Of a DNA stretch of 64,000 nucleotides, positions 38,379-50,099 are shown in pieces; the first letter of the stretch is position 1, and each line of letters begins with the position of its first letter. Under the pieces are notes generated by a model that made no database searches, was not told the origin of the DNA, and saw only the letters and a program-made list of their open reading frames with translations. The translations under genes were made by a program, and so were the position numbers. Source of the DNA: Macrostomum hystrix (lineage: Eukaryota > Animalia > Platyhelminthes); assembly GCA_950097015.1 (NCBI GenBank), contig CATNEN010000011.1:372001-436000 (forward strand). Reading direction: 5' to 3'.

Positions 38379-41300
38379 TCACTTAGCAACGGCGCCGTCT
38401 TCGTCGGATTCTTCCTCGGCCTGTTCTAGCCAGTTCAGGAATTTGTTTAACTGCAATGCGTTACGAGTGATGATTTTTTAGCTTTAGTTAGACTACGATT
38501 TCTGAAGCCATTTAGTGACAACTGGCAAAACTAGGTATATAGTTCCTCTAAATTCAATCTAATGGTTCTGCTCAGATGCCAGCTAATGGTTCTGCTCAAT
38601 TTCAAGCTAATGGTTCTGCTCAGATGCCAGCTAATGGTTCTGCTCAATTTCAAGCTAATGGTTCTGCTCAGATTTCAGCTAATGGTTCTGCTCAGATGCC
38701 AGCTGATGGTTCTGCTCAGATTTCAAGCTGATGGTTCTGCTCAGATGCCAGCTGATGGTTTTGCTCAGATGCCAGCTGATGGTTCTGCTCAGATGCCAGC
38801 TGATGGTTCTGCTCCAGCTAACCAGCTAACGGTTCAATGGTTCTCCAATAACGAGCCAATGGTTTTTTGCACAAGCCGACTTTAAATCAGATACCTTAAA
38901 GAAAGCTCTCCAGCCCTGCTCACCTGGAACAGCGCCTTGCCCTTGTCGGGATAGGCGTGGTTGACCTCCTCCTTCCAGCGCACAATGGTCTCCTCGTCGC
39001 AGACCTCCAAGTCATAGACTGTCATGAAGGCGCGCAGCAGGGCCGCCGGCGGATTGCCAGCCCGAACCCAGTGCACCAGCAGGCCGTTCAGCAGTTCTAG
39101 GCCATCAAGATTGGCCAGCAGTTGGGCGTAAGGGCCAAGTCGAGTCTGCAAGAAGCAAACGGGAGAAATTATGGAGTTTTTTAAACAGTCTTTGACTTTC
39201 TCTAAACAGCTGTTTTTGCAGTTGCACCTCTGATTCTGCAATGCTAATCTCACAGTCCTCAGTGAGAGTATTCAATTTATCTAATTTCTAATTAAAACTA
39301 CGAGCATCTAACAATAGGCTGCATATTGTGCTGACCTTCTCCAGCTGCAGCTTCTCCTTGTCGGTGTGTTCGGCACTGCCCGGATCGGTTTCGACCGCGC
39401 TATAGACGTGGTGCACCAGGGCGTGAACGAACTCCGGCTTGCGCAGCAGCTCCTCGTCTGCGTTGGCTAGAAATGCGGCCACCTGGTCTGGAGCGGAGCC
39501 GACACGACCGCGTCGGAGATCCTCCAACAATTTGAGCTTCGGCACTAGGCCGGTGAGGCCGCGCTCCTCAACAGCTGCTAGGAGGTCGGCGCCTTCTGGC
39601 AGCAGTTCGGTCATTTGCAGTCCGGCCTCGGACAGGCGAGCCCTGATCCAGTCAGCAGAGCGCTGAGCAATGAGCTGCTGCAGAAGTAGCAAGCCAAGCG
39701 GGTGGTGACGCCCGCCGCGAAGGACGGAGAAACAGTCGGCAAGTGAGACCTGGGAGCAGTTTGGAAGAGGCAGCGTGAGGTAAGCGAGTTCTGATACCAA
39801 GATATACTGACGAAAGGGAAAAAATCAATCAAACCTGATTCTGCAGCACTAGCTGAGCAACTATTTTAGCGCTGCGCGATCGAACGAGAGGCACACCGGT
39901 AGACTCAAGCGAGGCCATCGAATGGTCGCAATACTGGCGGAGTCCGCTCAGCACCGAGCCGGCAGGACAGAGAGCCCTTGCCTGCTGGTGCTGCTTAACG
40001 TCAGCGATGTGAGGTGTTTCGCCCAGGTACTCCAGCAGGCTGACAACACTAGAGGGTTCAGCCTCAATGCCAGCCACAAGTAGTCGGTGAACCAGTAGTT
40101 CGGGTCGTTCAGTTGGCCAGGTCAGGCGATTGAGTTGGTCGCGAACCCAGGCATGATCTCCAGACCAAAGGCGGGTGCCAAGCGATTCTATATCGCGAGC
40201 GGCGATCACCTGGGCGAGGCGGTATGTCGATAAGATAGATCTATTGATAATTGTTCGGAGTCAGGGAGGCTGTTGCGCGGTATTTAGAGTTTCTTACTCC
40301 TAGCTAAGAGGTGTGGAGTTCGAATCCTAGCCTTTTAAAACAATTCGTATAGATAAGCGTGATATTTAGTTCCAGATTAAATCTTCGAGCATCTAACAAG
40401 CGAGAAATTTTCGTTACAGGATCTGTTCTCTGAAGCAACAGCAAGCCACGGGCTACCAAGCAAGCCATCTACCCCACATGCACAGGTACATTTAACCTAT
40501 TCTTATTAGTCTTTACTGAAAGCTGATCGCATATTAATTGCTAATAGTCATGGCATAGCTAACCTGCGGCGACTCCGGCTCCTCTTTCTTAGCTGTCGAC
40601 TGATGCTGCTGGCCCCTTCCGTAATTATGTCCCTTTGCTGTTACCTGACGGAAATAGGCAGGCTCAAACGTGAATGTCGCCTGCTTTGGCTTGGCTAACA
40701 GCGGCATGTCGTTGCGGCGCTGCTGCTGCAGCTGCGGGGGTGGCCCAGTCGGCTGCTGCCAACGGTGATGTCCTTGAGGAGCCAAAATCGTACCCCCACC
40801 CTGATGCTGCTGGTGCTGTAGTTGTTGCTTGTGCTGCTGTTGCTGCTGCTGCTGCTGCTGAGACCTAGCAGACATCTGGGGCAGCTGCTGCAATCGACCA
40901 AGCGATTGAAGCTTAGGTCCGAAAGGGGCCGCATTGCCGTTACCATTAGTCGCCGAAGCAGACGGAGGCACTTTTGGCTCCGCGCCACCGCTAGAGGATG
41001 GCATGGCGACATCCGATGAAGCGGCCGCAGCTGCTATCAGTGCCGGCTGATGCGGTCGTCGCCAGGCAGATGGCTCATCTTTCATGAGGGGTGGTGGATG
41101 CTGCGGCGGCGGTGGCTGCTGCATCAGGTGTCGCTCTTTAGACGCGTTAGACGCTGTCAAAAGCAGCGGCGCACTACTATGACCACCGTTGGAATTAGCG
41201 CCTCCGCCATTAACGGCGATGCCGCCGCCACTGCCGACTCCAGTTATTCCGCCAGCTCCATCGCGCCATTCGTCCATCATGCGCGGCCTATCGGCGTCGA

Positions 41301-42784
41301 CCTGCTGACCCAGCCGACGCGGCACCCAGGCGTTGCGCCGCAGCTCCAGCAGGTCGTCGAGCATGAAGCGCACGCGCAAGGGCAGACCGCCGCCGCCGGC
41401 CGCAGCTGCGGCAGTAGCCGATGCCGTTGTCGACATAATTTTGCCCACCCTAGCAAAGTACTGGTCGAACAGGTTGACGGCCGGCCCGGTGTCAAAGCGC
41501 CTGCCCGTGATAAGCAGCAGGGTGCACAGGCACTCCATATCCATAGGCAGGTTTGGGCCGCTCTTGCTGGCGAGCAGTTTTCTAATGCACCTGTGCAGCA
41601 CGGGCTCCGGGACGAGGCCGCGCAGGCTGAGCTCGCCAATGAAGCGGAACAGGCCAACCAGAGCGCTGAGTCGCCTGCTAGTGGCCTCTTCAAGCTGTTG
41701 ACGCCGCTGTTCATCGATATCGCCACCGGCAGCAGCGTCGCCGACGCTCCCATTGCCGGCATTGTTGACAACCAGTGGCGCTAGACCGGCTAAGACGTTG
41801 TGCCTACCTTCAAATCTGTTCTCGCAGTAGGCCAGCAAGAGCAGGCCGAAACTGCTGGCAGCCGCGGCGCCGATGGAGCCGGCCGCCGGCTGCTGCTGAC
41901 GAGACGCCGGCCTACCGCTATTGACGCTGGCAGCCGCTGAGCTCAATGGTGGCGATTCGAAATCCGGAGCGTCGCAACACAGGCGCAAGCAGAGATCGGC
42001 GTATAAACCGCTAAATTTTACCTCATTGCAAGCCTTCTCCAGTACTAGGTGGGCGATGTCCTTTAAAATCTGCTTGGACTCTATGCCAACATTGAGGATG
42101 TCGATTGATAGCTTGTCGAACTTTTCCGGTGTTATTTTGTTGAGAATGCTAAAAGATGCAATTAAAGCAAACTGAGCAAAATAACAAATTAGGTCCAAAG
42201 CATTAACCTGCTTCGTTATTAAAATAACTATCTAGATAAGCTAGGATTTACTGCTTACGCGGCTGATTAATGGGCAAAATGGACAATATCAGGATCAAGA
42301 ATATCAATTCGGGAATAGGTAATATATGAAAACCAGGCCAGGGTAATAAAGCCTCTTGGGTAAGGACTAGTGGTAGTATTGGCTAGCTGGAAGGTGGGTA
42401 GAATTGAACTAAGACTATGCCCCAAAGCTTTGAATAATAAGGAATAGAAACAAAATATGTAATAGAATAGAAACGAGCTTACCCCTTGACTTTTTTAACA
42501 ATGACCTGACGCCGCTCCTCCTGATCTAGACCAGCTTTGTTCACCTGAACAGGCGGAACCCATTTAGTTTGAGAGGGTAGAAACCGAAGATTGCTGGCGT
42601 TGTTGGTAGACGCTGCAGTTTGGTTTGTGGCGCAGTTGTTAATCTGCTGCACTAGACTGAAGCACGCTGCATTCGGCTGAGCCTGCTGCTGCTGCTGATG
42701 GCCAAAGTGAAGCTGATCATTAAAGCCGGCGGTTTTATAACTCTGCGGGGATAATCTGCGATCCCCAAGTGAAATTGTCTCCAG
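38379..42784 (-). CDS. EIF4G2: eIF4G2 / DAP5 / NAT1 (p97), about 989 aa, probable non-AUG start
   Basis: Exons (minus): 42784-42483, 42148-40564, 40209-39835, 39749-39336, 39145-38924, 38450-38379; total 2970 nt in frame. MIF4G (KVKG|ILNKITPEKFDKL...NVGIESKQILK), MA3-like region, W2 with KGKALFQ and acidic NWLEQAEEESDE tail. No eIF4E-binding YxxxxL-phi motif in the N-terminus. Confidence 0.93.
38560..38830. repeat. 24-bp minisatellite (agctaatggttctgctcagatgcc) in the last EIF4G2 intron
   Basis: Tandem periodicity. Confidence 0.9.
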
Positions 42785-43608
42785 AATTTTGATAAAGAGA
42801 GGTTTAGGGAAAAATAAAACAATTAAGGACCAGGGACCTCACTATAAGAAATGGACAATGCTATTTAAAACAAGTTTTCACCACAGATAGGCGACTCAGG
42901 TGTTGCAGCACGTCTGAAATGAAGGAGGAGAGAACGGTTTTATAAACAGTAAGGTATAAGCTATTAGCAATATAAAACAAATTACTAGCTTTAAATGAGA
43001 AACACTTCATGTTGACATGTAATTTTGCATACATAAACCAAAGTTTAACTAAATGAAGGACAGAAATAAAATTCAAATTTATTAAACATATTGAAATCCC
43101 ACATTCAGTCCATCACTAGATACTTGAATAAAAATCTTAAAGGTTGTCAATTGCCTTAGCACATACCCAGCCTTTTTTCTTTTTGCTTCTTTAAATGGAT
43201 CATTGAACTGTTGTTTATTTCCTGGTTAAAATAGATTAGCCACTTTCACTATAATGCTCTTTTGTTCATGTATCTTTTTTGACACTAGATAACAGTTTTT
43301 TGTTTTATGTGTTTAAAATAAAATACACTATAGAAAATGTAAAAGTATAATATTGCATGTAGATAATTTCTCACCATTAAATAGCAAACACCATTACTGC
43401 ATTATAAGCCTAAATTATATTTTGGCATATGCAACAAAAATCTAATACCAGAAACTTCCAGCATGCAACCCCACCTTCCACAATATGGTATGGTATACAT
43501 GTGATGTAATGCAGTTGTAGGCCCAACATATATTTAGCTGCCATTGACTGCTACAAACTTGATTTGTCACCCTTTATATTTGTTCTCATTTTTATCTGTA
43601 ACTGCCTA

Positions 43609-44538
43609 GGCAGAGCTTATTCCCACTGTCCTGTGCCGATAATTTCAATTTTATCCACACGGATCCGTGCCGATAATTTTCTGCTTATCCACACGGCAGC
43701 TTGTATGAATAGGTCTACAACTCTTTATATAAATATGCAGTGCCATTAATTTCAATTTTATCAACACGGTTCTGTTTTTTGAAATGAGATTCTTTTGGGT
43801 TTGAACGTTTTGTTGAATGCTTAAGACAATAGATTGACAAAGTTGCCAGTGTGTTACGACTGTTTTTTACATTTCGACCTACACTATACATTCATTAACT
43901 GACATTAATGTCATCCTTTTTAATTATTATAATAACAACTTACCTAATCTTTTCTCATCGTTTAGTGTTTTCATTTGAATTGTATAGACTTAAAAAGTAA
44001 GAAGTCTATCAAAGAAAATCATATGAGTCAACCAGCAGAATTCTAGTCAGCACCAAACTCGTCACACATATTATCACTCATCATTGTTATTATTTTATTT
44101 TACACTATGCATTGATAGTGTACACTATACACTATACTCTGAAGCAAAAGCCTTATGCTCAGAGAAGAATAGGTAGGGACTTGAAAGTAGACCTATTCAT
44201 ACAAGCTGCCATGTGGATAAGCAGAAAATTATCGGCAGGGATCCACATACATGTGCAACACCCGGCCGACCTGGCCAAAGCGGCTAGGTGAAACGAGGGC
44301 CAAGCAAGTAAGTCGCAAAAACCAATCAACCAAGTGCAAAAAAATCCAAGGGGGGACCAAGGGACAAAAAAGGAAGGCGTGAAGAAAAGGAAAAAGGGGA
44401 GAGAAAAAGAGAGCAAATGCGAGCAAACTAAGTCGCACGGCCAGCTAAGATTTAGGAGGTTGTGCATGTATGTGGATTGATGTGGATAATATTGAAATTA
44501 TTGGCACGGGACCATGGGAATAAGCACTTCCAACTGCC
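43609..44538. mobile_element. Putative MITE family 3 (TA|GGCAG...CTGCC|TA) with about 110-bp imperfect inverted arms
   Basis: 43609-43720 is the reverse complement of 44187-44242 plus 44476-44538. The arms carry a reiterated gccgataatt...ttatccacac motif. TA on both sides. Confidence 0.55.
44245..44473. mobile_element. Small MITE family 4, copy 1, nested in the right arm of family 3
   Basis: TIR ACATACATG. It interrupts an arm that is continuous in the left-hand copy. Homologous to 55742-55984. Confidence 0.65.
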
Positions 44539-44997
44539 TATGGCATAGCATGGGTCATTTCATTTGAAACTGGATGTTATAAGACAAAAAAGGCTTATCA
44601 ATCATGTAAAAGAGACTAGGGCTTTAATAAGGTGTAGGCCTAAGAGGGCTCAGGCCATAGTCCGGATCATGTTGACTGCATACCAGAAGAAAAATTGTGA
44701 ATAAATAGTTTGCAAGCCAAGGATGCAGAGTTTTTTAAATTGCACAGTAGTGCACACTAAGGTGTTACATCATATAATTTGTATAAAAAGAAGTAACACA
44801 TTTTTTGCTTTAAAGAGACAAACTGGCATCCATTTTTGTATTCAACAAAGAGCAAGATTAAACAGAACAATTTATTTATTTATAGTATTTATAGTACAAT
44901 TTACAAAACTTAAAAATGTTTTTACAAATAACAGAAAATGTTGTTTTAGTCCTGCAAAGTCTGTTAAATAATTGGTTGATATATGTAATTGTACATA

Positions 44998-47414
44998 TCT
45001 ATATATATAAAAGTGAAAACTCTGTCTGTCTGTCTGTCTGTCTGTGTGCAACCTTTTGTCTTTATAGACGCCGAAACCGCTCAACCAAATCGCACCAAAC
45101 TTTGCACATACCTAAAACCACCTACGCTGAGTGCAATAGGCTACTCAAATTCCCGAAAAATCATTTCCTTCCTGCTCAAAAGTGCAAAAAACTGCTCAAA
45201 AATCGTCAAAAAATCACTCAATTCGACATATCGTCGCCCCACTTTGTCAGATTTTCTCCAAATTTGATCCACTTACACTTTACATGTTTTCCAACAATGC
45301 TGTCAATTTTGAACATCTCTACTCAATCCAGAGCAAAGCTGCATCATCTCAAAGTGAGTCACTTTTTGTTTTCCGAGGACAGCCACCCCAACTCCCCTCC
45401 GCCACTCTGCGGGCCAAATTTTAATACAGCCACCCCCTCCCTTCCCCGGGCGCCGAAGCCCCAGACTGTACATTGCATTTCAAGCCGTGAATGTACACAG
45501 CCCAAACCCCTAGACTGTCTACTGGCCCCCAAGCAGCACTGAGACTGAGTGCGGTGAGTGCGGTGGCGTCCCAGTGCGCAGGGCTCTCCGGTCAATATTT
45601 CTCCAGCCAGCCTGGGATAGAAGAAAGAGAGAGGCTGGCGTACAGTGCTTTGCTAAAATACAAGACGGTTATCCGCTGTATCGACGGAGATCACGTGAGG
45701 ATGGCGGCTTTACCACTCGCATTATTCTATGCAGCCATGGGAATGAAGAGATCGATCTGGACAACAGATGGGTCGTTCCCTACTGCCCGCTACTGTCCAA
45801 GGTGTTCAATCCACACATCAACGTTGAGTACAGCAACTCTGTTAAATCAATCAAGTACATTTGCAAGTACGTGAACAAGGGTAGCGACCAAGCAGTGTTC
45901 AACATTGAGGGACCTGGAGGCATAGTAAACGAATTTGACGAAGTCAATCGCTTCAAGAGCGGAAGGTATCAGCTCTAACGAGGCAATGTGGCGAATCTTC
46001 GGATTCTCTATTCATGAACGCCACCCAACTGTCATGCACCTCAGTGTGCACCTGGAAAACGGTCAGAGAGTATACTTTACGGAGGAGAACATCCAGCAGC
46101 GTGCTCAAAGGCCACAGGACACTACTCTTACTGCTTTCTTCAAGTTGTGCGCTGAAGACCCCTTTGCCAGGACTTTGCTGTACCACCAGGTGCCTGCCTA
46201 TTACACATGGAACGCCTCTTCGAAAGGATGGAAGCGGCGGGTTCAAGGCGCTGCAGTTCCAGGCCATCCTGAAATACGACAGACTGATGCATTAGCTAGA
46301 GTACACGGTGCACCCAAACCACAGTGAATGCTACTACCTGCTACACACCGTGATTGGTCCGACGTCATTTAGACACATTAGAACGGTGGAAGGCCATACC
46401 TGCCAAACTTTTCATGAAGCATGTCAGCGACTGGGACTGCTGGAAGAGCTGGATGACCAGGAGCAGCTGGGACAGTTCATAGAGGAGAATGAGCCCCGAC
46501 TCATGCCTGAGCAGCTAGAGGCGTACCGCGAGCTATTGCGCAGAGTCAACAACAACGTTGGTGGCATGGTTTTTCTTGATGCTCCAGGTGGCACAGGAAA
46601 AAAATTTCTAATCAACCTCCTTCTGGCAAAGGTCAGGCAACGAGGCGACGTTGCCATTGCTGTAGCTTCCTCTGGAATTACAGCCACCTTGCTGCCAGGC
46701 GGTCGCACTGCCCACTCAGCACTGAAGTTGCCGCTTGATCTGTCTTGAGCGGAGAATCCGCTGTGCAACATCAAGAAAAACACAGGCACTGCCAGAGTGC
46801 TTCAGGCTTGCAAGCTTATCGTCTGGGATGAGTGTACCATGTCCCACAAACTGGCATTTGAAGCACTCAACTTAACTTTGAAAGACCTGCGCAATAGCAA
46901 TCAACTGATGGGTGGTGTCACTCTGCTGCTGTCTGGAGACTTTAGACAGACGCTGCCTGTGATTCCGCGAGGCACTCCTGCTGATGAGATTAATGCTTTC
47001 CTAAAATCATCTCACCTGTGGCCATCGGTTGTGAAGTTGCACCTACGAACAAACATGAGAGCTACAATTCAAGGAGACGAAACAGCTCATGAGTTCTCTG
47101 CCAATCTATTGCGAATCGGCAATGGTCTGCTGGAGATTAGCACAGAGAATGGGCAGTCATCGATCGCTACAATCGGAACCATTGTGCAGTCAGTGCAGGA
47201 GCTCAAGGCAAAAGTTTACCCGAACCTGATGGTTCGATATGCTGACGTTGACTGGCTGTCAGAGCCAGTACGCCCTTAAACAAACTCTTCACTTTTCATT
47301 CATGCAGTAAATAAATAAATGGTGACCTTCACTATAAAGTTAATACAGAGACGTGAATTGCTTACTGCTTTGCTTTAAATTTCTGCCCCAAAAACAACGG
47401 GCAAAAAAAGCTAG
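44998..47414 (+). mobile_element. Internally deleted Helitron with pseudogenised RepHel fragments
   Basis: 5' end A|TCTATATATATAAAAG followed by (ctgt)n; 3' hairpin TGCCC...GGGCA then CTAG|T. Rep motif SIKYICKYVNKG and PIF1 helicase motifs (LDAPGGTGK, GRTAHS, VWDE, GDFRQTLPV), broken by frameshifts and stops. Confidence 0.9.
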
Positions 47415-49089: not shown

Positions 49090-50099
49090 AATGAAGTTCT
49101 ATTCTACGAAGTTTTATAACCCATCACCCTTTCAAACCACTGCAGACACAGATTTTATAAACTATTTTTAATTTGGACTAGGCCTATTTTATAGCATTAA
49201 AGGCCTAGTTTAAGAACCCTTTTTCCCTAAATTATTGAGACTATTCAAATAGCGAAATTTATGTTGTGCTATAACAAGCGTAGACATTTTTTCGTGGCAG
49301 TCAAATATAAAAAAGACACAGATTACTTACTTATAAGCAAATAAAGCAAACAACAAAACTATTTACTGTAAAGGACAAAATTTGTCCTCAGATAATCGCG
49401 TAATTGCAAAAAATAATTTTGATTTCAAAATTGTTTGTCAACAAGTCACGAATTAAAAAAGTGATAAGTCGATGCACGTTTTAAACAAAGCACAACCATT
49501 AACATAAATAAAAAAGCTTTGTAAATATTTTTCCTCTAACTTTTTTACTTAGTAAGAAAAAATTATTGTATAATTTTATTTACATTATGTTGAAAAACTT
49601 CAGTGCGTCTTTGCGATATTGACGAAATAAAATATTGTACTTAACTACACACTGATACAATTTCTCTTAGGTCTTTCTAACCGATATTTTATAAATTAGC
49701 TAAATAATATAACTGCACAGATACATTATGCTTTTTCTATACGCACCTATAATAATGGATTGCTCGTTGCTGCGGTGAACGAAGGGAAAGTAGTTCTCAG
49801 CAATTTTAACATAGCTTTAACCGCGGTTGTCATGCACAAATAATTGCAAAGTGTAATGTTAAAGCTTTCCGAATGGTACAAAGCTGTACTTAAAAATGCG
49901 AGGTGTCGAAAGGTCTATAATGAAAATGAAAATATTCACTCTGAAATATGAGACATAAAATTTGTACTAATGTTGTATTTTTCTGATTAAATAGATACTT
50001 GAATTGAATTTATTTAGAATTCACAAAATATATTTTTATACCTAACTAGACTTTCACACCAGGGACAAGATAGTAACTTGTCGTCCCTACAGCAGAACT

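What the first reader, a model, noticed from the sequence alone, without database searches (positions are those of the whole stretch)
42740..42845. eIF4G2/DAP5/NAT1 apparently initiates at a CUG codon
Seen: the frame containing PQSYKTAG, KWVPP and the MIF4G domain is closed upstream by an in-frame TGA (42841-42839), just after a strong acceptor (cttatag, 42843-42842). No in-frame ATG occurs until PMDMECL, deep inside MIF4G. CTG at 42784-42782 sits in a strong context (AAAATT CTG G; A at -3, G at +4) and gives (M)ETISLGDRR, comparable to vertebrate (M)ESAIAEGGASR. Established: vertebrate EIF4G2 starts at GUG and Drosophila NAT1 at CUG. Inference: non-AUG initiation is conserved in this lineage, and standard annotation would truncate the protein or invent an exon. 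An out-of-frame ATG follows at about 42720.
Basis: partly seen in the sequence, partly recalled or inferred. Interest (0 to 1): 0.7.

Follow-up and report, generated by a model that had tools for sequence, protein, structure and literature searches.

The report
Flatworm DAP5 starts at CUG
In the flatworm Macrostomum hystrix the mRNA for the translation factor eIF4G2/DAP5 has a trans-spliced leader and no usable AUG, so the protein most likely starts at a conserved CUG; this extends a known vertebrate, fly and ascidian peculiarity to flatworms and explains a truncated gene model in a sister species.

Summary
The sequence observation holds: TGA at 42841-42839, CTG at 42784-42782 with A at -3 and G at +4, no in-frame ATG for about 300 codons, and an out-of-frame ATG at 42720.

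The proposed exon boundary is wrong. RNA contigs from three runs read straight through the 'acceptor' at 42842 and the internal one at 42743. The real acceptor is tttcag|ACG at 42915-14|42913. There the mRNA receives the 35-nt Macrostomum spliced leader. In one further run it instead receives a cis exon ending at 49331.

The genome is the M. hystrix assembly. The leader's terminal AUG falls in the main frame but is closed by four stops. The cis exon ends in an in-frame TAA. Neither mRNA form seen therefore offers an AUG for this ORF.

In M. lignano the acceptor and AAAATTCTGG are identical, and a 49-nt invariant block spans the CTG. Upstream of it, indels break the frame. Downstream, indels are multiples of three and changes favour third codon positions.

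The M. lignano annotated protein starts at an internal ATG inside MIF4G, so it is truncated.

Non-AUG initiation is well supported. The CUG itself is inferred, not shown. This is a new member of a known kind, of moderate interest. The scan had not noted it on other DNA.

The parts
49331..49391 (-). Alternative cis-spliced 5' exon ('exon 0'). At least 61 nt are seen; the 5' end is unknown. It ends in TAA (49333-49331), which is in frame with the main ORF. Donor GTAAGT lies at 49330-49325.
   Evidence: The X1 contig carries 61 loose letters at 42913. They match the window exactly at 49331-49360. The donor was read.
42914..42930 (-). Polypyrimidine tract and AG (42915-42914). This is the acceptor used both for SL trans-splicing and for cis-splicing of exon 0.
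   Evidence: Contigs of X5, X6, X7 and X1 all end their genomic match at 42914/42913. The sequence ctcctccttcatttcag|acg was read. It is conserved in M. lignano.
42483..42913 (-). Exon 1 (431 nt): a 129-nt non-coding leader followed by 302 nt of coding sequence.
   Evidence: RNA contigs cover it without gaps or differences in X5, X6 and X7. The joint 42148->42483 removes a GT..AG intron.
42785..42913 (-). Genome-encoded 5' leader. It has no ATG. In-frame stops lie at TGA 42898-96, TGA 42880-78, TAG 42844-42 and TGA 42841-39. Together with the SL's AUG it forms a 6-codon uORF (MTCCNT*).
   Evidence: Against M. lignano it is 65% identical, has frame-breaking indels (2, 6, 2, 1) and shows no codon-position bias.
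42782..42784 (-). CTG, the proposed initiation codon (A at -3, G at +4).
   Evidence: The ten bases AAAATTCTGG are identical in M. lignano.
42747..42795 (-). A 49-nt block identical between M. hystrix and M. lignano, from -11 to +38 of the CTG. It is the longest identical block in the aligned 520 nt.
42747..42766 (-). Candidate hairpin GGGGAU / 8-nt loop / AUCCCC at +19 to +38. It is only a weak candidate enhancer of CUG recognition.
   Evidence: It is -9.5 kcal/mol alone, with pair probability about 0.68 in a 120-nt context. 1.5% of shuffles hold a comparable hairpin at that distance. The z-score of a 66-nt fold is only -1.24.
42652..42720 (-). First AUG after the leader, in frame +1 and in weak context (U at -3, A at +4). 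It opens a 22-codon overlapping ORF. It probably captures ribosomes that scanned past the CUG.
   Evidence: The ATG is conserved in M. lignano, where it opens a 13-codon ORF.
42149..42482 (-). Intron 1 (334 nt, GT..AG).
   Evidence: The joint is present in X5, X6 and X7.
40564..42148 (-). Exon 2. It holds the MIF4G domain and a Q/A/G-rich linker, in frame from 42147 (ILNKITPEKFDKL...). The 3' end at 40564 is inferred from the donor CAG|GTTAGC and the M. lignano protein.
   Evidence: Pfam MIF4G scores 1e-30. The best solved relative is human eIF4G2 MIF4G, 4IUL, at 5.7e-42. RNA contigs cover 41800-42148.
38380..40209 (-). Remaining coding exons: roughly 40209-39813, 39812-39336, 39148-38915 and 38456-38380. 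They include the W2 domain and an acidic tail. Boundaries are not RNA-verified.
   Evidence: tblastn of the M. lignano protein P0001. Pfam W2 scores 3e-8. Sequences were read.

Best explanation
This is the 5' end of the single-copy eIF4G2/DAP5/NAT1 gene of Macrostomum hystrix, on the minus strand.

Shown:
- The pre-mRNA is processed at the acceptor 42915-14|42913.
- In three runs the 35-nt Macrostomum spliced leader is trans-spliced there. In a fourth run a cis exon ending at 49331 is joined there instead.
- The mature leader is the SL plus 129 nt.
- The SL's own 3'-terminal AUG, in weak context, opens a 6-codon uORF. That uORF happens to lie in the main frame and is closed by four stops.
- No other AUG precedes the CUG.

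Inferred:
- Scanning 43S complexes that skip the SL AUG, or resume scanning after the uORF, initiate with Met-tRNAi at CUG 42784-42782. It lies in A(-3)/G(+4) context and gives (M)ETISLGDRRLSPQSYKTAG... followed by MIF4G.
- Ribosomes that miss the CUG mostly start at the +1-frame AUG at 42720 and terminate after 22 codons. Few therefore reach the in-frame AUG about 300 codons downstream.
- As in mammals, a near-cognate start would make DAP5 output sensitive to start-codon stringency factors (eIF1, eIF5, 5MP).
For: RNA evidence:
- Contigs of 1745-1772 nt in X5, X6 and X7 cover 41800-42148 and 42483-42914 with zero differences.
- They carry a GT..AG joint. Two of them also carry 24-25 extra letters equal to the 3' part of the SL.
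- About 30 nt is the most a k=31 assembly can carry into a sequence shared by thousands of mRNAs.

Spliced leader:
- It matches the published 35-nt SL (PMC8629364).
- It has 28 exact copies in this genome, none near the window. They sit in tandem arrays and are followed by GTAAG.
- The SL RNA folds into three hairpins (z = -3.35).

Genome identity: 220,453,370 bases in 42 contigs equals M. hystrix in Table 1 of PMC10468722.

Cis exon 0.

ATGs, stops and near-cognates.

M. lignano comparison:
- The acceptor is identical, and so is AAAATTCTGG.
- A 49-nt invariant block spans -11 to +38.
- The leader is 65% identical, with indels of 2, 6, 2 and 1 and substitutions of 16/14/14 by pseudo-codon position.
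- Downstream is 83% identical, with indels of 27 and 12 only and substitutions of 12/9/25.
- Four of the five changed codons in the first 27 are synonymous.
- M. lignano also has no in-frame ATG.

Identity as eIF4G2.

Literature:
- Non-AUG starts of eIF4G2 are known in vertebrates, Drosophila and Halocynthia.
- (A/G)xxNUGG is the minimum context for CUG/GUG starts (PMC5714202).
Against: - There is no direct evidence of initiation: no ribosome profiling, no N-terminal peptide and no mutagenesis.
- Only one other species could be compared. It is identical around the CTG, so the comparison cannot separate CUG from AUU 42787 or AUC 42793, which lie in the same invariant block.
- The runs were available only as assembled contigs. 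These hide rare isoforms and give no usage ratios. X1's label as RNA is a guess, although its 6.4-kb GT..AG joint argues for RNA.
- The AU-rich upstream context lacks the GCCGCC 'NAT1 motif' that makes the mammalian site efficient.
- The downstream hairpin is weak.
Confidence: 0.74

Rival explanations
1. Initiation is non-AUG but at a neighbouring near-cognate, or at several of them. The candidates are AUU 42787-85, AUC 42793-91 and AUU 42775-73. They would give a protein one or three residues longer, or three residues shorter.
For: All three lie inside the 49-nt block that is invariant in M. lignano and in the same frame. The last frame-breaking indel lies upstream of them, near 42810.
Against: AUU and AUC are generally much weaker than CUG. 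None has G at +4 together with a purine at -3: AUU 42787 has A/C, AUC 42793 has U/A, and AUU 42775 has A/U. The three codons just upstream of AUC differ non-synonymously between the species.
Confidence: 0.1
2. A minor or tissue-specific mRNA isoform brings an AUG-bearing exon in frame, for example into the internal AG at 42743. That isoform would make the real protein, and the SL form would be poorly translated.
For: Contigs drop rare variants (tool caveat). Two different 5' ends are already seen at one acceptor.
Against: No such joint appears in four runs, and the contigs run through 42743 and 42842 unbroken. Both observed 5' pieces are closed in frame. Residues encoded upstream of 42743 (ETISLGDRRLSPQ) are perfectly conserved in M. 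lignano. M. lignano likewise has no ATG.
Confidence: 0.05
3. Translation starts further downstream. One option is GUG 42652-50 (SLVQQ). The other is the first in-frame AUG (PMDMECL), as gene callers assume. Either gives a shorter protein, and the upstream 'coding' look would be RNA-level conservation.
For: The GUG is conserved in M. lignano. ORF callers pick these starts.
Against: The GUG context is poor: A at -3 with C at +4 in M. hystrix, and U at -3 with C at +4 in M. lignano. Between the CTG and the GUG, indels are a multiple of three and changes are mainly synonymous. An AUG start at codon ~303 would delete two thirds of MIF4G, which is conserved with human eIF4G2 from its first helix. 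The internal ATG used in the M. lignano annotation is a Thr codon in M. hystrix.
Confidence: 0.06
4. The SL's terminal AUG is the initiator, as shown for some flatworm mRNAs. It would reach the main ORF by stop-codon readthrough or by an unseen alternative acceptor.
For: Flatworm SLs end in AUG, and that AUG can serve as an initiator (Cheng et al. 2006, cited in PMC12582326). In M. hystrix the SL AUG is in frame 0.
Against: Four in-frame stops intervene. In M. lignano the same acceptor puts the SL AUG in frame +1, so the frame match is not conserved. The leader shows no coding constraint.
Confidence: 0.02

Closest known systems
Vertebrate EIF4G2/NAT1/DAP5 GUG initiation, and the non-AUG starts of the Drosophila and Halocynthia orthologues (Takahashi et al. 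2005, as summarised in PMC9945437 and PMC9977666)
   Same: It is the orthologous gene. Translation begins at a near-cognate codon with a purine at -3 and G at +4, a short distance upstream of the P-Q-x-Y...TAG / KW[IV]PP / KV[KR]G-ILNK motifs. The surroundings of the start are strongly conserved. The leader contains an AUG uORF. There is no in-frame AUG for a long way downstream.
   Different: The codon is CUG, not GUG. The upstream context is AU-rich and lacks the GCCGCC 'NAT1 motif' described for mammals (PMC5714202, PMC13754004). The 5' end is made by SL trans-splicing, so the uORF AUG comes from the leader itself. The lineage is Platyhelminthes (Spiralia), for which I found no report.
Flatworm SL trans-spliced mRNAs whose SL 3'-terminal AUG can act as initiator (Cheng et al. 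2006; PMC12582326)
   Same: The mRNA carries the SL ending in AUG, joined at a canonical AG acceptor. The SL is the 35-nt Macrostomum SL (PMC8629364).
   Different: Here the SL AUG cannot start the protein. It only makes a 6-codon uORF, and the main ORF needs a non-AUG start. The same acceptor is also used for cis-splicing of an upstream exon.
Structure-assisted (START) initiation at CUG codons (Kozak 1990; PMC11165317)
   Same: A hairpin starts at +19, inside the +17 to +32 range in which downstream structure helped CUG initiation in reporters.
   Different: Its predicted stability is -9.5 kcal/mol, below the roughly -15 kcal/mol threshold found in reticulocyte lysate. No covariation is available. 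It is treated only as a lead.

Membership tests
eIF4G2/DAP5/NAT1 orthologue | The MIF4G domain is closest to eIF4G2 rather than eIF4G1/3. | tested here: met
   Pfam MIF4G scores 9.9e-31. The best PDB sequence hit is human eIF4G2 MIF4G, 4IUL, at 5.7e-42. eIF4G1 and eIF4GII score about 1e-22.
eIF4G2/DAP5/NAT1 orthologue | A C-terminal W2 domain. | tested here: met
   Pfam W2 scores 3.4e-8 in the ORF at 38882-39253.
eIF4G2/DAP5/NAT1 orthologue | A central MA3 domain. | tested here: inconclusive
   Pfam finds no MA3 at E <= 0.01 in the two middle ORF pieces. The precomputed Pfam list of the M. lignano protein also lacks it. The domain may be divergent. The spliced whole protein was not searched.
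eIF4G2/DAP5/NAT1 orthologue | No N-terminal PABP- or eIF4E-binding region; MIF4G lies close to the N-terminus. | tested here: met
   The mRNA 5' end is fixed by the SL at 42913. Only about 100 codons lie between the upstream stop and MIF4G.
Non-AUG-initiated eIF4G2 mRNA | The mature mRNA has no open in-frame AUG upstream of the conserved N-terminal coding region. | tested here: met
   This holds for both the SL form and the exon-0 form. It also holds for M. lignano.
Non-AUG-initiated eIF4G2 mRNA | A near-cognate codon in (A/G)xxNUGG context. | tested here: met
   AUU CUG G. The criterion comes from PMC5714202.
Non-AUG-initiated eIF4G2 mRNA | The start codon and its surroundings are conserved in related species, and coding constraint begins there. 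| tested here: met
   Only one other species, M. lignano, was available. It shows the 49-nt identical block and the switch in indel and codon-position pattern at the CTG.
Non-AUG-initiated eIF4G2 mRNA | Initiation at that codon is shown experimentally. | not testable with these tools
   This needs initiation-site ribosome profiling, N-terminal proteomics or a reporter mutation.
Mammalian 'NAT1 motif' context | A GCCGCC extension immediately upstream of the start. | tested here: not met
   The upstream sequence is UUAUCAAAAUU. The site may work like NAT1 but does not carry this motif.
SL trans-spliced flatworm mRNA | The 5' end of the RNA carries an SL that is not encoded next to the gene, joined at an AG. 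| tested here: met
   24-25 SL letters sit at 42914 in X5 and X6. The SL lies only at other loci. The acceptor was read.
SL trans-spliced flatworm mRNA | SL RNA genes have a GT donor, an Sm-like site and a three-hairpin fold. | tested here: met
   At L006:1501-1535 (minus) the SL is followed by GTAAG. The fold has three hairpins with AUAUUUUUAG between hairpins 2 and 3, z = -3.35.
START (structure-assisted CUG initiation) | A downstream structure stable enough, about -15 kcal/mol or better, at +17 to +32. | tested here: not met
   The position (+19) fits, but the stability is only -9.5 kcal/mol. The threshold comes from PMC11165317.

The most novel reading that the evidence does not exclude
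The non-AUG start of eIF4G2 would be ancestral to Bilateria and actively maintained even in a lineage that remodels mRNA 5' ends by trans-splicing. The 49-nt invariant block, comprising the AU-rich context, the CUG and the +19 hairpin, would be a dedicated element. It would let ribosomes on an SL-capped mRNA pass the leader's own AUG and start at the CUG. DAP5 output would then act as a read-out of start-codon stringency in flatworm stem cells.
Probability: 0.25. Interest if true: 0.55.

Novelty: new member of a known kind. Interest (0 to 1): 0.36.

Why it matters
- **Phylogenetic reach.** It extends one of the best-known obligatory non-AUG starts, that of eIF4G2/NAT1, to Platyhelminthes. This supports an old, bilaterian-wide origin rather than a deuterostome and fly peculiarity.
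- **Trans-splicing.** The feature survives SL trans-splicing, in which the leader itself supplies an AUG that has to be bypassed.
- **Annotation.** AUG-only gene callers truncate this protein. The M. lignano GenBank entry lacks about 245 N-terminal residues, including the first half of MIF4G. Knock-down, antibody and phylogenetic work on flatworm DAP5 should use the corrected model.
- **Testability.** Macrostomum has transgenesis, so the CUG can be tested directly.

Tried and rejected
42842 and 42743 are rejected as the main acceptors, because the contigs read through both.
- **Word-based protein search.** Two searches with exon 2, whole and then residues 1-290, returned only the M. lignano protein, two metagenomic fragments and a few distant eIF4G-type proteins.
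  - P0002 is cut at LNK.
  - P0003's 'M' follows an intron acceptor and says nothing about the start.
  - No further flatworm 5' ends could be obtained.
- **Metagenome scan.** An exact-pattern scan of metagenome contigs with 24 nt around the CTG found nothing.
- **Own genome.** It holds one copy of exon 1, so there are no paralogues to compare.
- **Takahashi et al. 2005.** The paper is not held, so I relied on two reviews.
- **Earlier-findings look-ups.** They gave nothing relevant.
- **Hairpin as an enhancer.** This was kept only as a lead. The z-score is -1.24, stability is -9.5 kcal/mol, 1.5% of shuffles match it, and it falls below the published threshold.
Only the leader (SL plus exon 1) was read in frame inside a script.
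  - The large representative-protein search was not used, because the claim does not rest on absence of relatives.

Full report
**1. The observation**

On the minus strand the frame that encodes PQSYKTAG, KWVPP and the start of MIF4G is closed by TAG-TGA at 42844-42839. A CTG sits 19 codons later at 42784-42782 in AAAATT CTG G.
- It is the only in-frame near-cognate in this interval with both a purine at -3 and G at +4.
- The next AUG, at 42720, is in frame +1 and opens a 22-codon ORF.
- The first in-frame AUG is PMDMECL, about 303 codons further on.

**2. What the gene and the genome are**
- The large downstream ORF has a MIF4G domain (Pfam 1e-30) and the last exons a W2 domain.
- The closest solved sequence is the MIF4G domain of human eIF4G2 (4IUL, 5.7e-42). 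eIF4G1 and eIF4GII score about 1e-22.
- The window's assembly has 220,453,370 bases in 42 contigs. This is exactly the published Macrostomum hystrix assembly (PMC10468722).
- Exon 1 is single-copy in that genome.

**3. The mRNA 5' end**

Four public runs were laid on window:41800-47799.

In X5, X6 and X7, contigs of 1745-1772 nt:
- cover 41800-42148 and 42483-42914 with no differences;
- remove a 334-nt GT..AG intron, so they are cDNA;
- stop matching the genome at 42914/42913, directly after tttcag.

In X5 and X6 the contigs continue for 24-25 letters that are not in the window. These letters are the 3' part of the 35-nt Macrostomum spliced leader (PMC8629364).
- The leader occurs 28 times exactly in this genome, mostly in tandem arrays of about 11.6 kb on other contigs.
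- There it is followed by GTAAG.
- It lies in an RNA that folds into the canonical three hairpins with an Sm-like site.

The dominant form in these runs is therefore SL trans-spliced at 42914|42913.

In X1 a contig joins the same acceptor to 61 nt that match the window at 49391-49331. These are followed by GTAAGT. This is a cis-spliced alternative 5' exon, 6.4 kb upstream.

**4. No AUG is available**

SL form:
- The leader's terminal AUG falls in frame 0.
- It is followed by TGA 42898, TGA 42880, TAG 42844 and TGA 42841, so it only makes the uORF MTCCNT*.
- The 129 genome-encoded leader bases contain no ATG.

Exon-0 form:
- The exon ends in an in-frame TAA.
- The 61 nt seen hold no ATG.

**5. 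Comparison with M. lignano**

The only close relative reachable was the M. lignano genomic contig that encodes P0001. Exon 1 aligns at L008:7849-8269.

| Region | Identity | Indels | Substitutions by codon position |
|---|---|---|---|
| Leader (42913-42785) | 65% | 2, 6, 2, 1 (frame-breaking) | 16/14/14 |
| CTG to exon end | 83% | 27 and 12 (in frame) | 12/9/25 |

- The acceptor is identical, and so is AAAATTCTGG.
- The longest identical block of the whole alignment is 49 nt (42795-42747) and runs from -11 to +38 of the CTG.
- Four of the five changed codons among the first 27 are synonymous.
- The last frame-breaking indel is near 42810.
- M. lignano also lacks an in-frame ATG. There the SL AUG would be in frame +1, so the frame match in M. 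hystrix is chance.

Coding constraint therefore begins between about 42810 and about 42749. The CUG is the only strong candidate in that interval.

**6. Annotation consequence**

The M. lignano GenBank protein (733 aa) begins MASRRL... at an ATG inside exon 2. About 145 open codons of MIF4G lie upstream of it, plus the whole of exon 1. That codon is Thr in M. hystrix.

**7. Mechanism**

Shown:
- the mRNA structure;
- the absence of an AUG;
- the conserved CUG context;
- the onset of coding constraint.

Inferred:
- scanning past the weak-context SL AUG, or resuming after it;
- Met-tRNAi initiation at the CUG;
- capture of leaky ribosomes by the conserved +1 AUG at 42720;
- sensitivity to eIF1, eIF5 and 5MP, as in mammals (PMC5714202).

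A hairpin GGGGAU/AUCCCC starts at +19. It is -9.5 kcal/mol with pair probability about 0.68, and 1.5% of shuffles hold a comparable one.
- It lies in the distance range where structures help CUG starts.
- It is weaker than the roughly -15 kcal/mol threshold reported (PMC11165317).
- The local fold is not unusual (z = -1.24).

I keep it only as a lead.

**8. What is known**
- eIF4G2 uses GUG in human, mouse, Xenopus and zebrafish.
- The Drosophila orthologue is non-AUG but its start is not precisely determined (PMC9945437).
- Halocynthia is also non-AUG (PMC9977666).
- I found no report for flatworms.
- Flatworm SLs characteristically end in AUG, and that AUG can be an initiator (PMC12582326). 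Here it cannot.

This is a new member of a known kind. It has two local features: the CUG lies in an AU-rich context without the mammalian GCCGCC motif, and the 5' end is trans-spliced.

**9. Limits**
- The runs were available only as assembled contigs. Rare isoforms and usage ratios are invisible, and X1's label as RNA is a guess, although its spliced joint argues for RNA.
- Only one other species was compared. It is identical around the start, so CUG cannot be separated from the adjacent AUU and AUC by conservation.

**Verdict**
- Confidence is about 0.9 for a non-AUG start and about 0.74 for this CUG.
- Interest is moderate.

Noticed in passing
L006:1420-2000 (minus); arrays at G000:C15, C17 and C42: The SL RNA genes of M. 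hystrix sit in tandem units of about 11.6 kb. A U1 snRNA gene (Rfam U1, 151.7 bits) lies about 300 nt upstream of the SL gene on the same strand. The genome holds 28 exact and 15 one-mismatch copies of the SL 3' part.
   Followed up: partly
window 42913 / 49331: One acceptor serves both SL trans-splicing (X5, X6) and cis-splicing of an exon 6.4 kb upstream (X1). This may reflect two promoters: one upstream of exon 0, and one inside the 6.4-kb interval that yields an outron. Relative usage is unknown.
   Followed up: partly
window 46308-47279 (+), also 45491-46327: Broken PIF1-like helicase ORFs (Pfam PIF1 4e-21 and 9.5e-29), presumably a decayed Helitron, lie inside the 6.4-kb intron/outron of the DAP5 gene. 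RNA contigs cover them at appreciable depth, with variants and a 1259-nt skip, so related copies are transcribed.
   Followed up: partly
window 44200-44600 and 43600-43800: Contig depths of several hundred in all three RNA runs, with many variant letters, point to short multi-copy repeats that are transcribed from many loci.
   Followed up: no
window 42780-42781: In run X1 the two contigs over exon 1 break right after the CTG, at 42779 and 42782. At depth 3-7 this may be coverage noise, or it may be a variant next to the start codon.
   Followed up: no
L008:17857-34519: Downstream of the M. lignano DAP5 gene, a 29-nt piece of the last coding exon recurs about every 0.8-1.2 kb for about 17 kb. 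The annotated gene span of 26 kb runs across this tandem array, which looks like another annotation problem.
   Followed up: no
L009:560-800: A metagenomic animal contig (ENA) encodes a DAP5-like protein. Its called 'M' follows an intron acceptor, and a Q-rich exon lies upstream, so its true start is also unresolved.
   Followed up: partly
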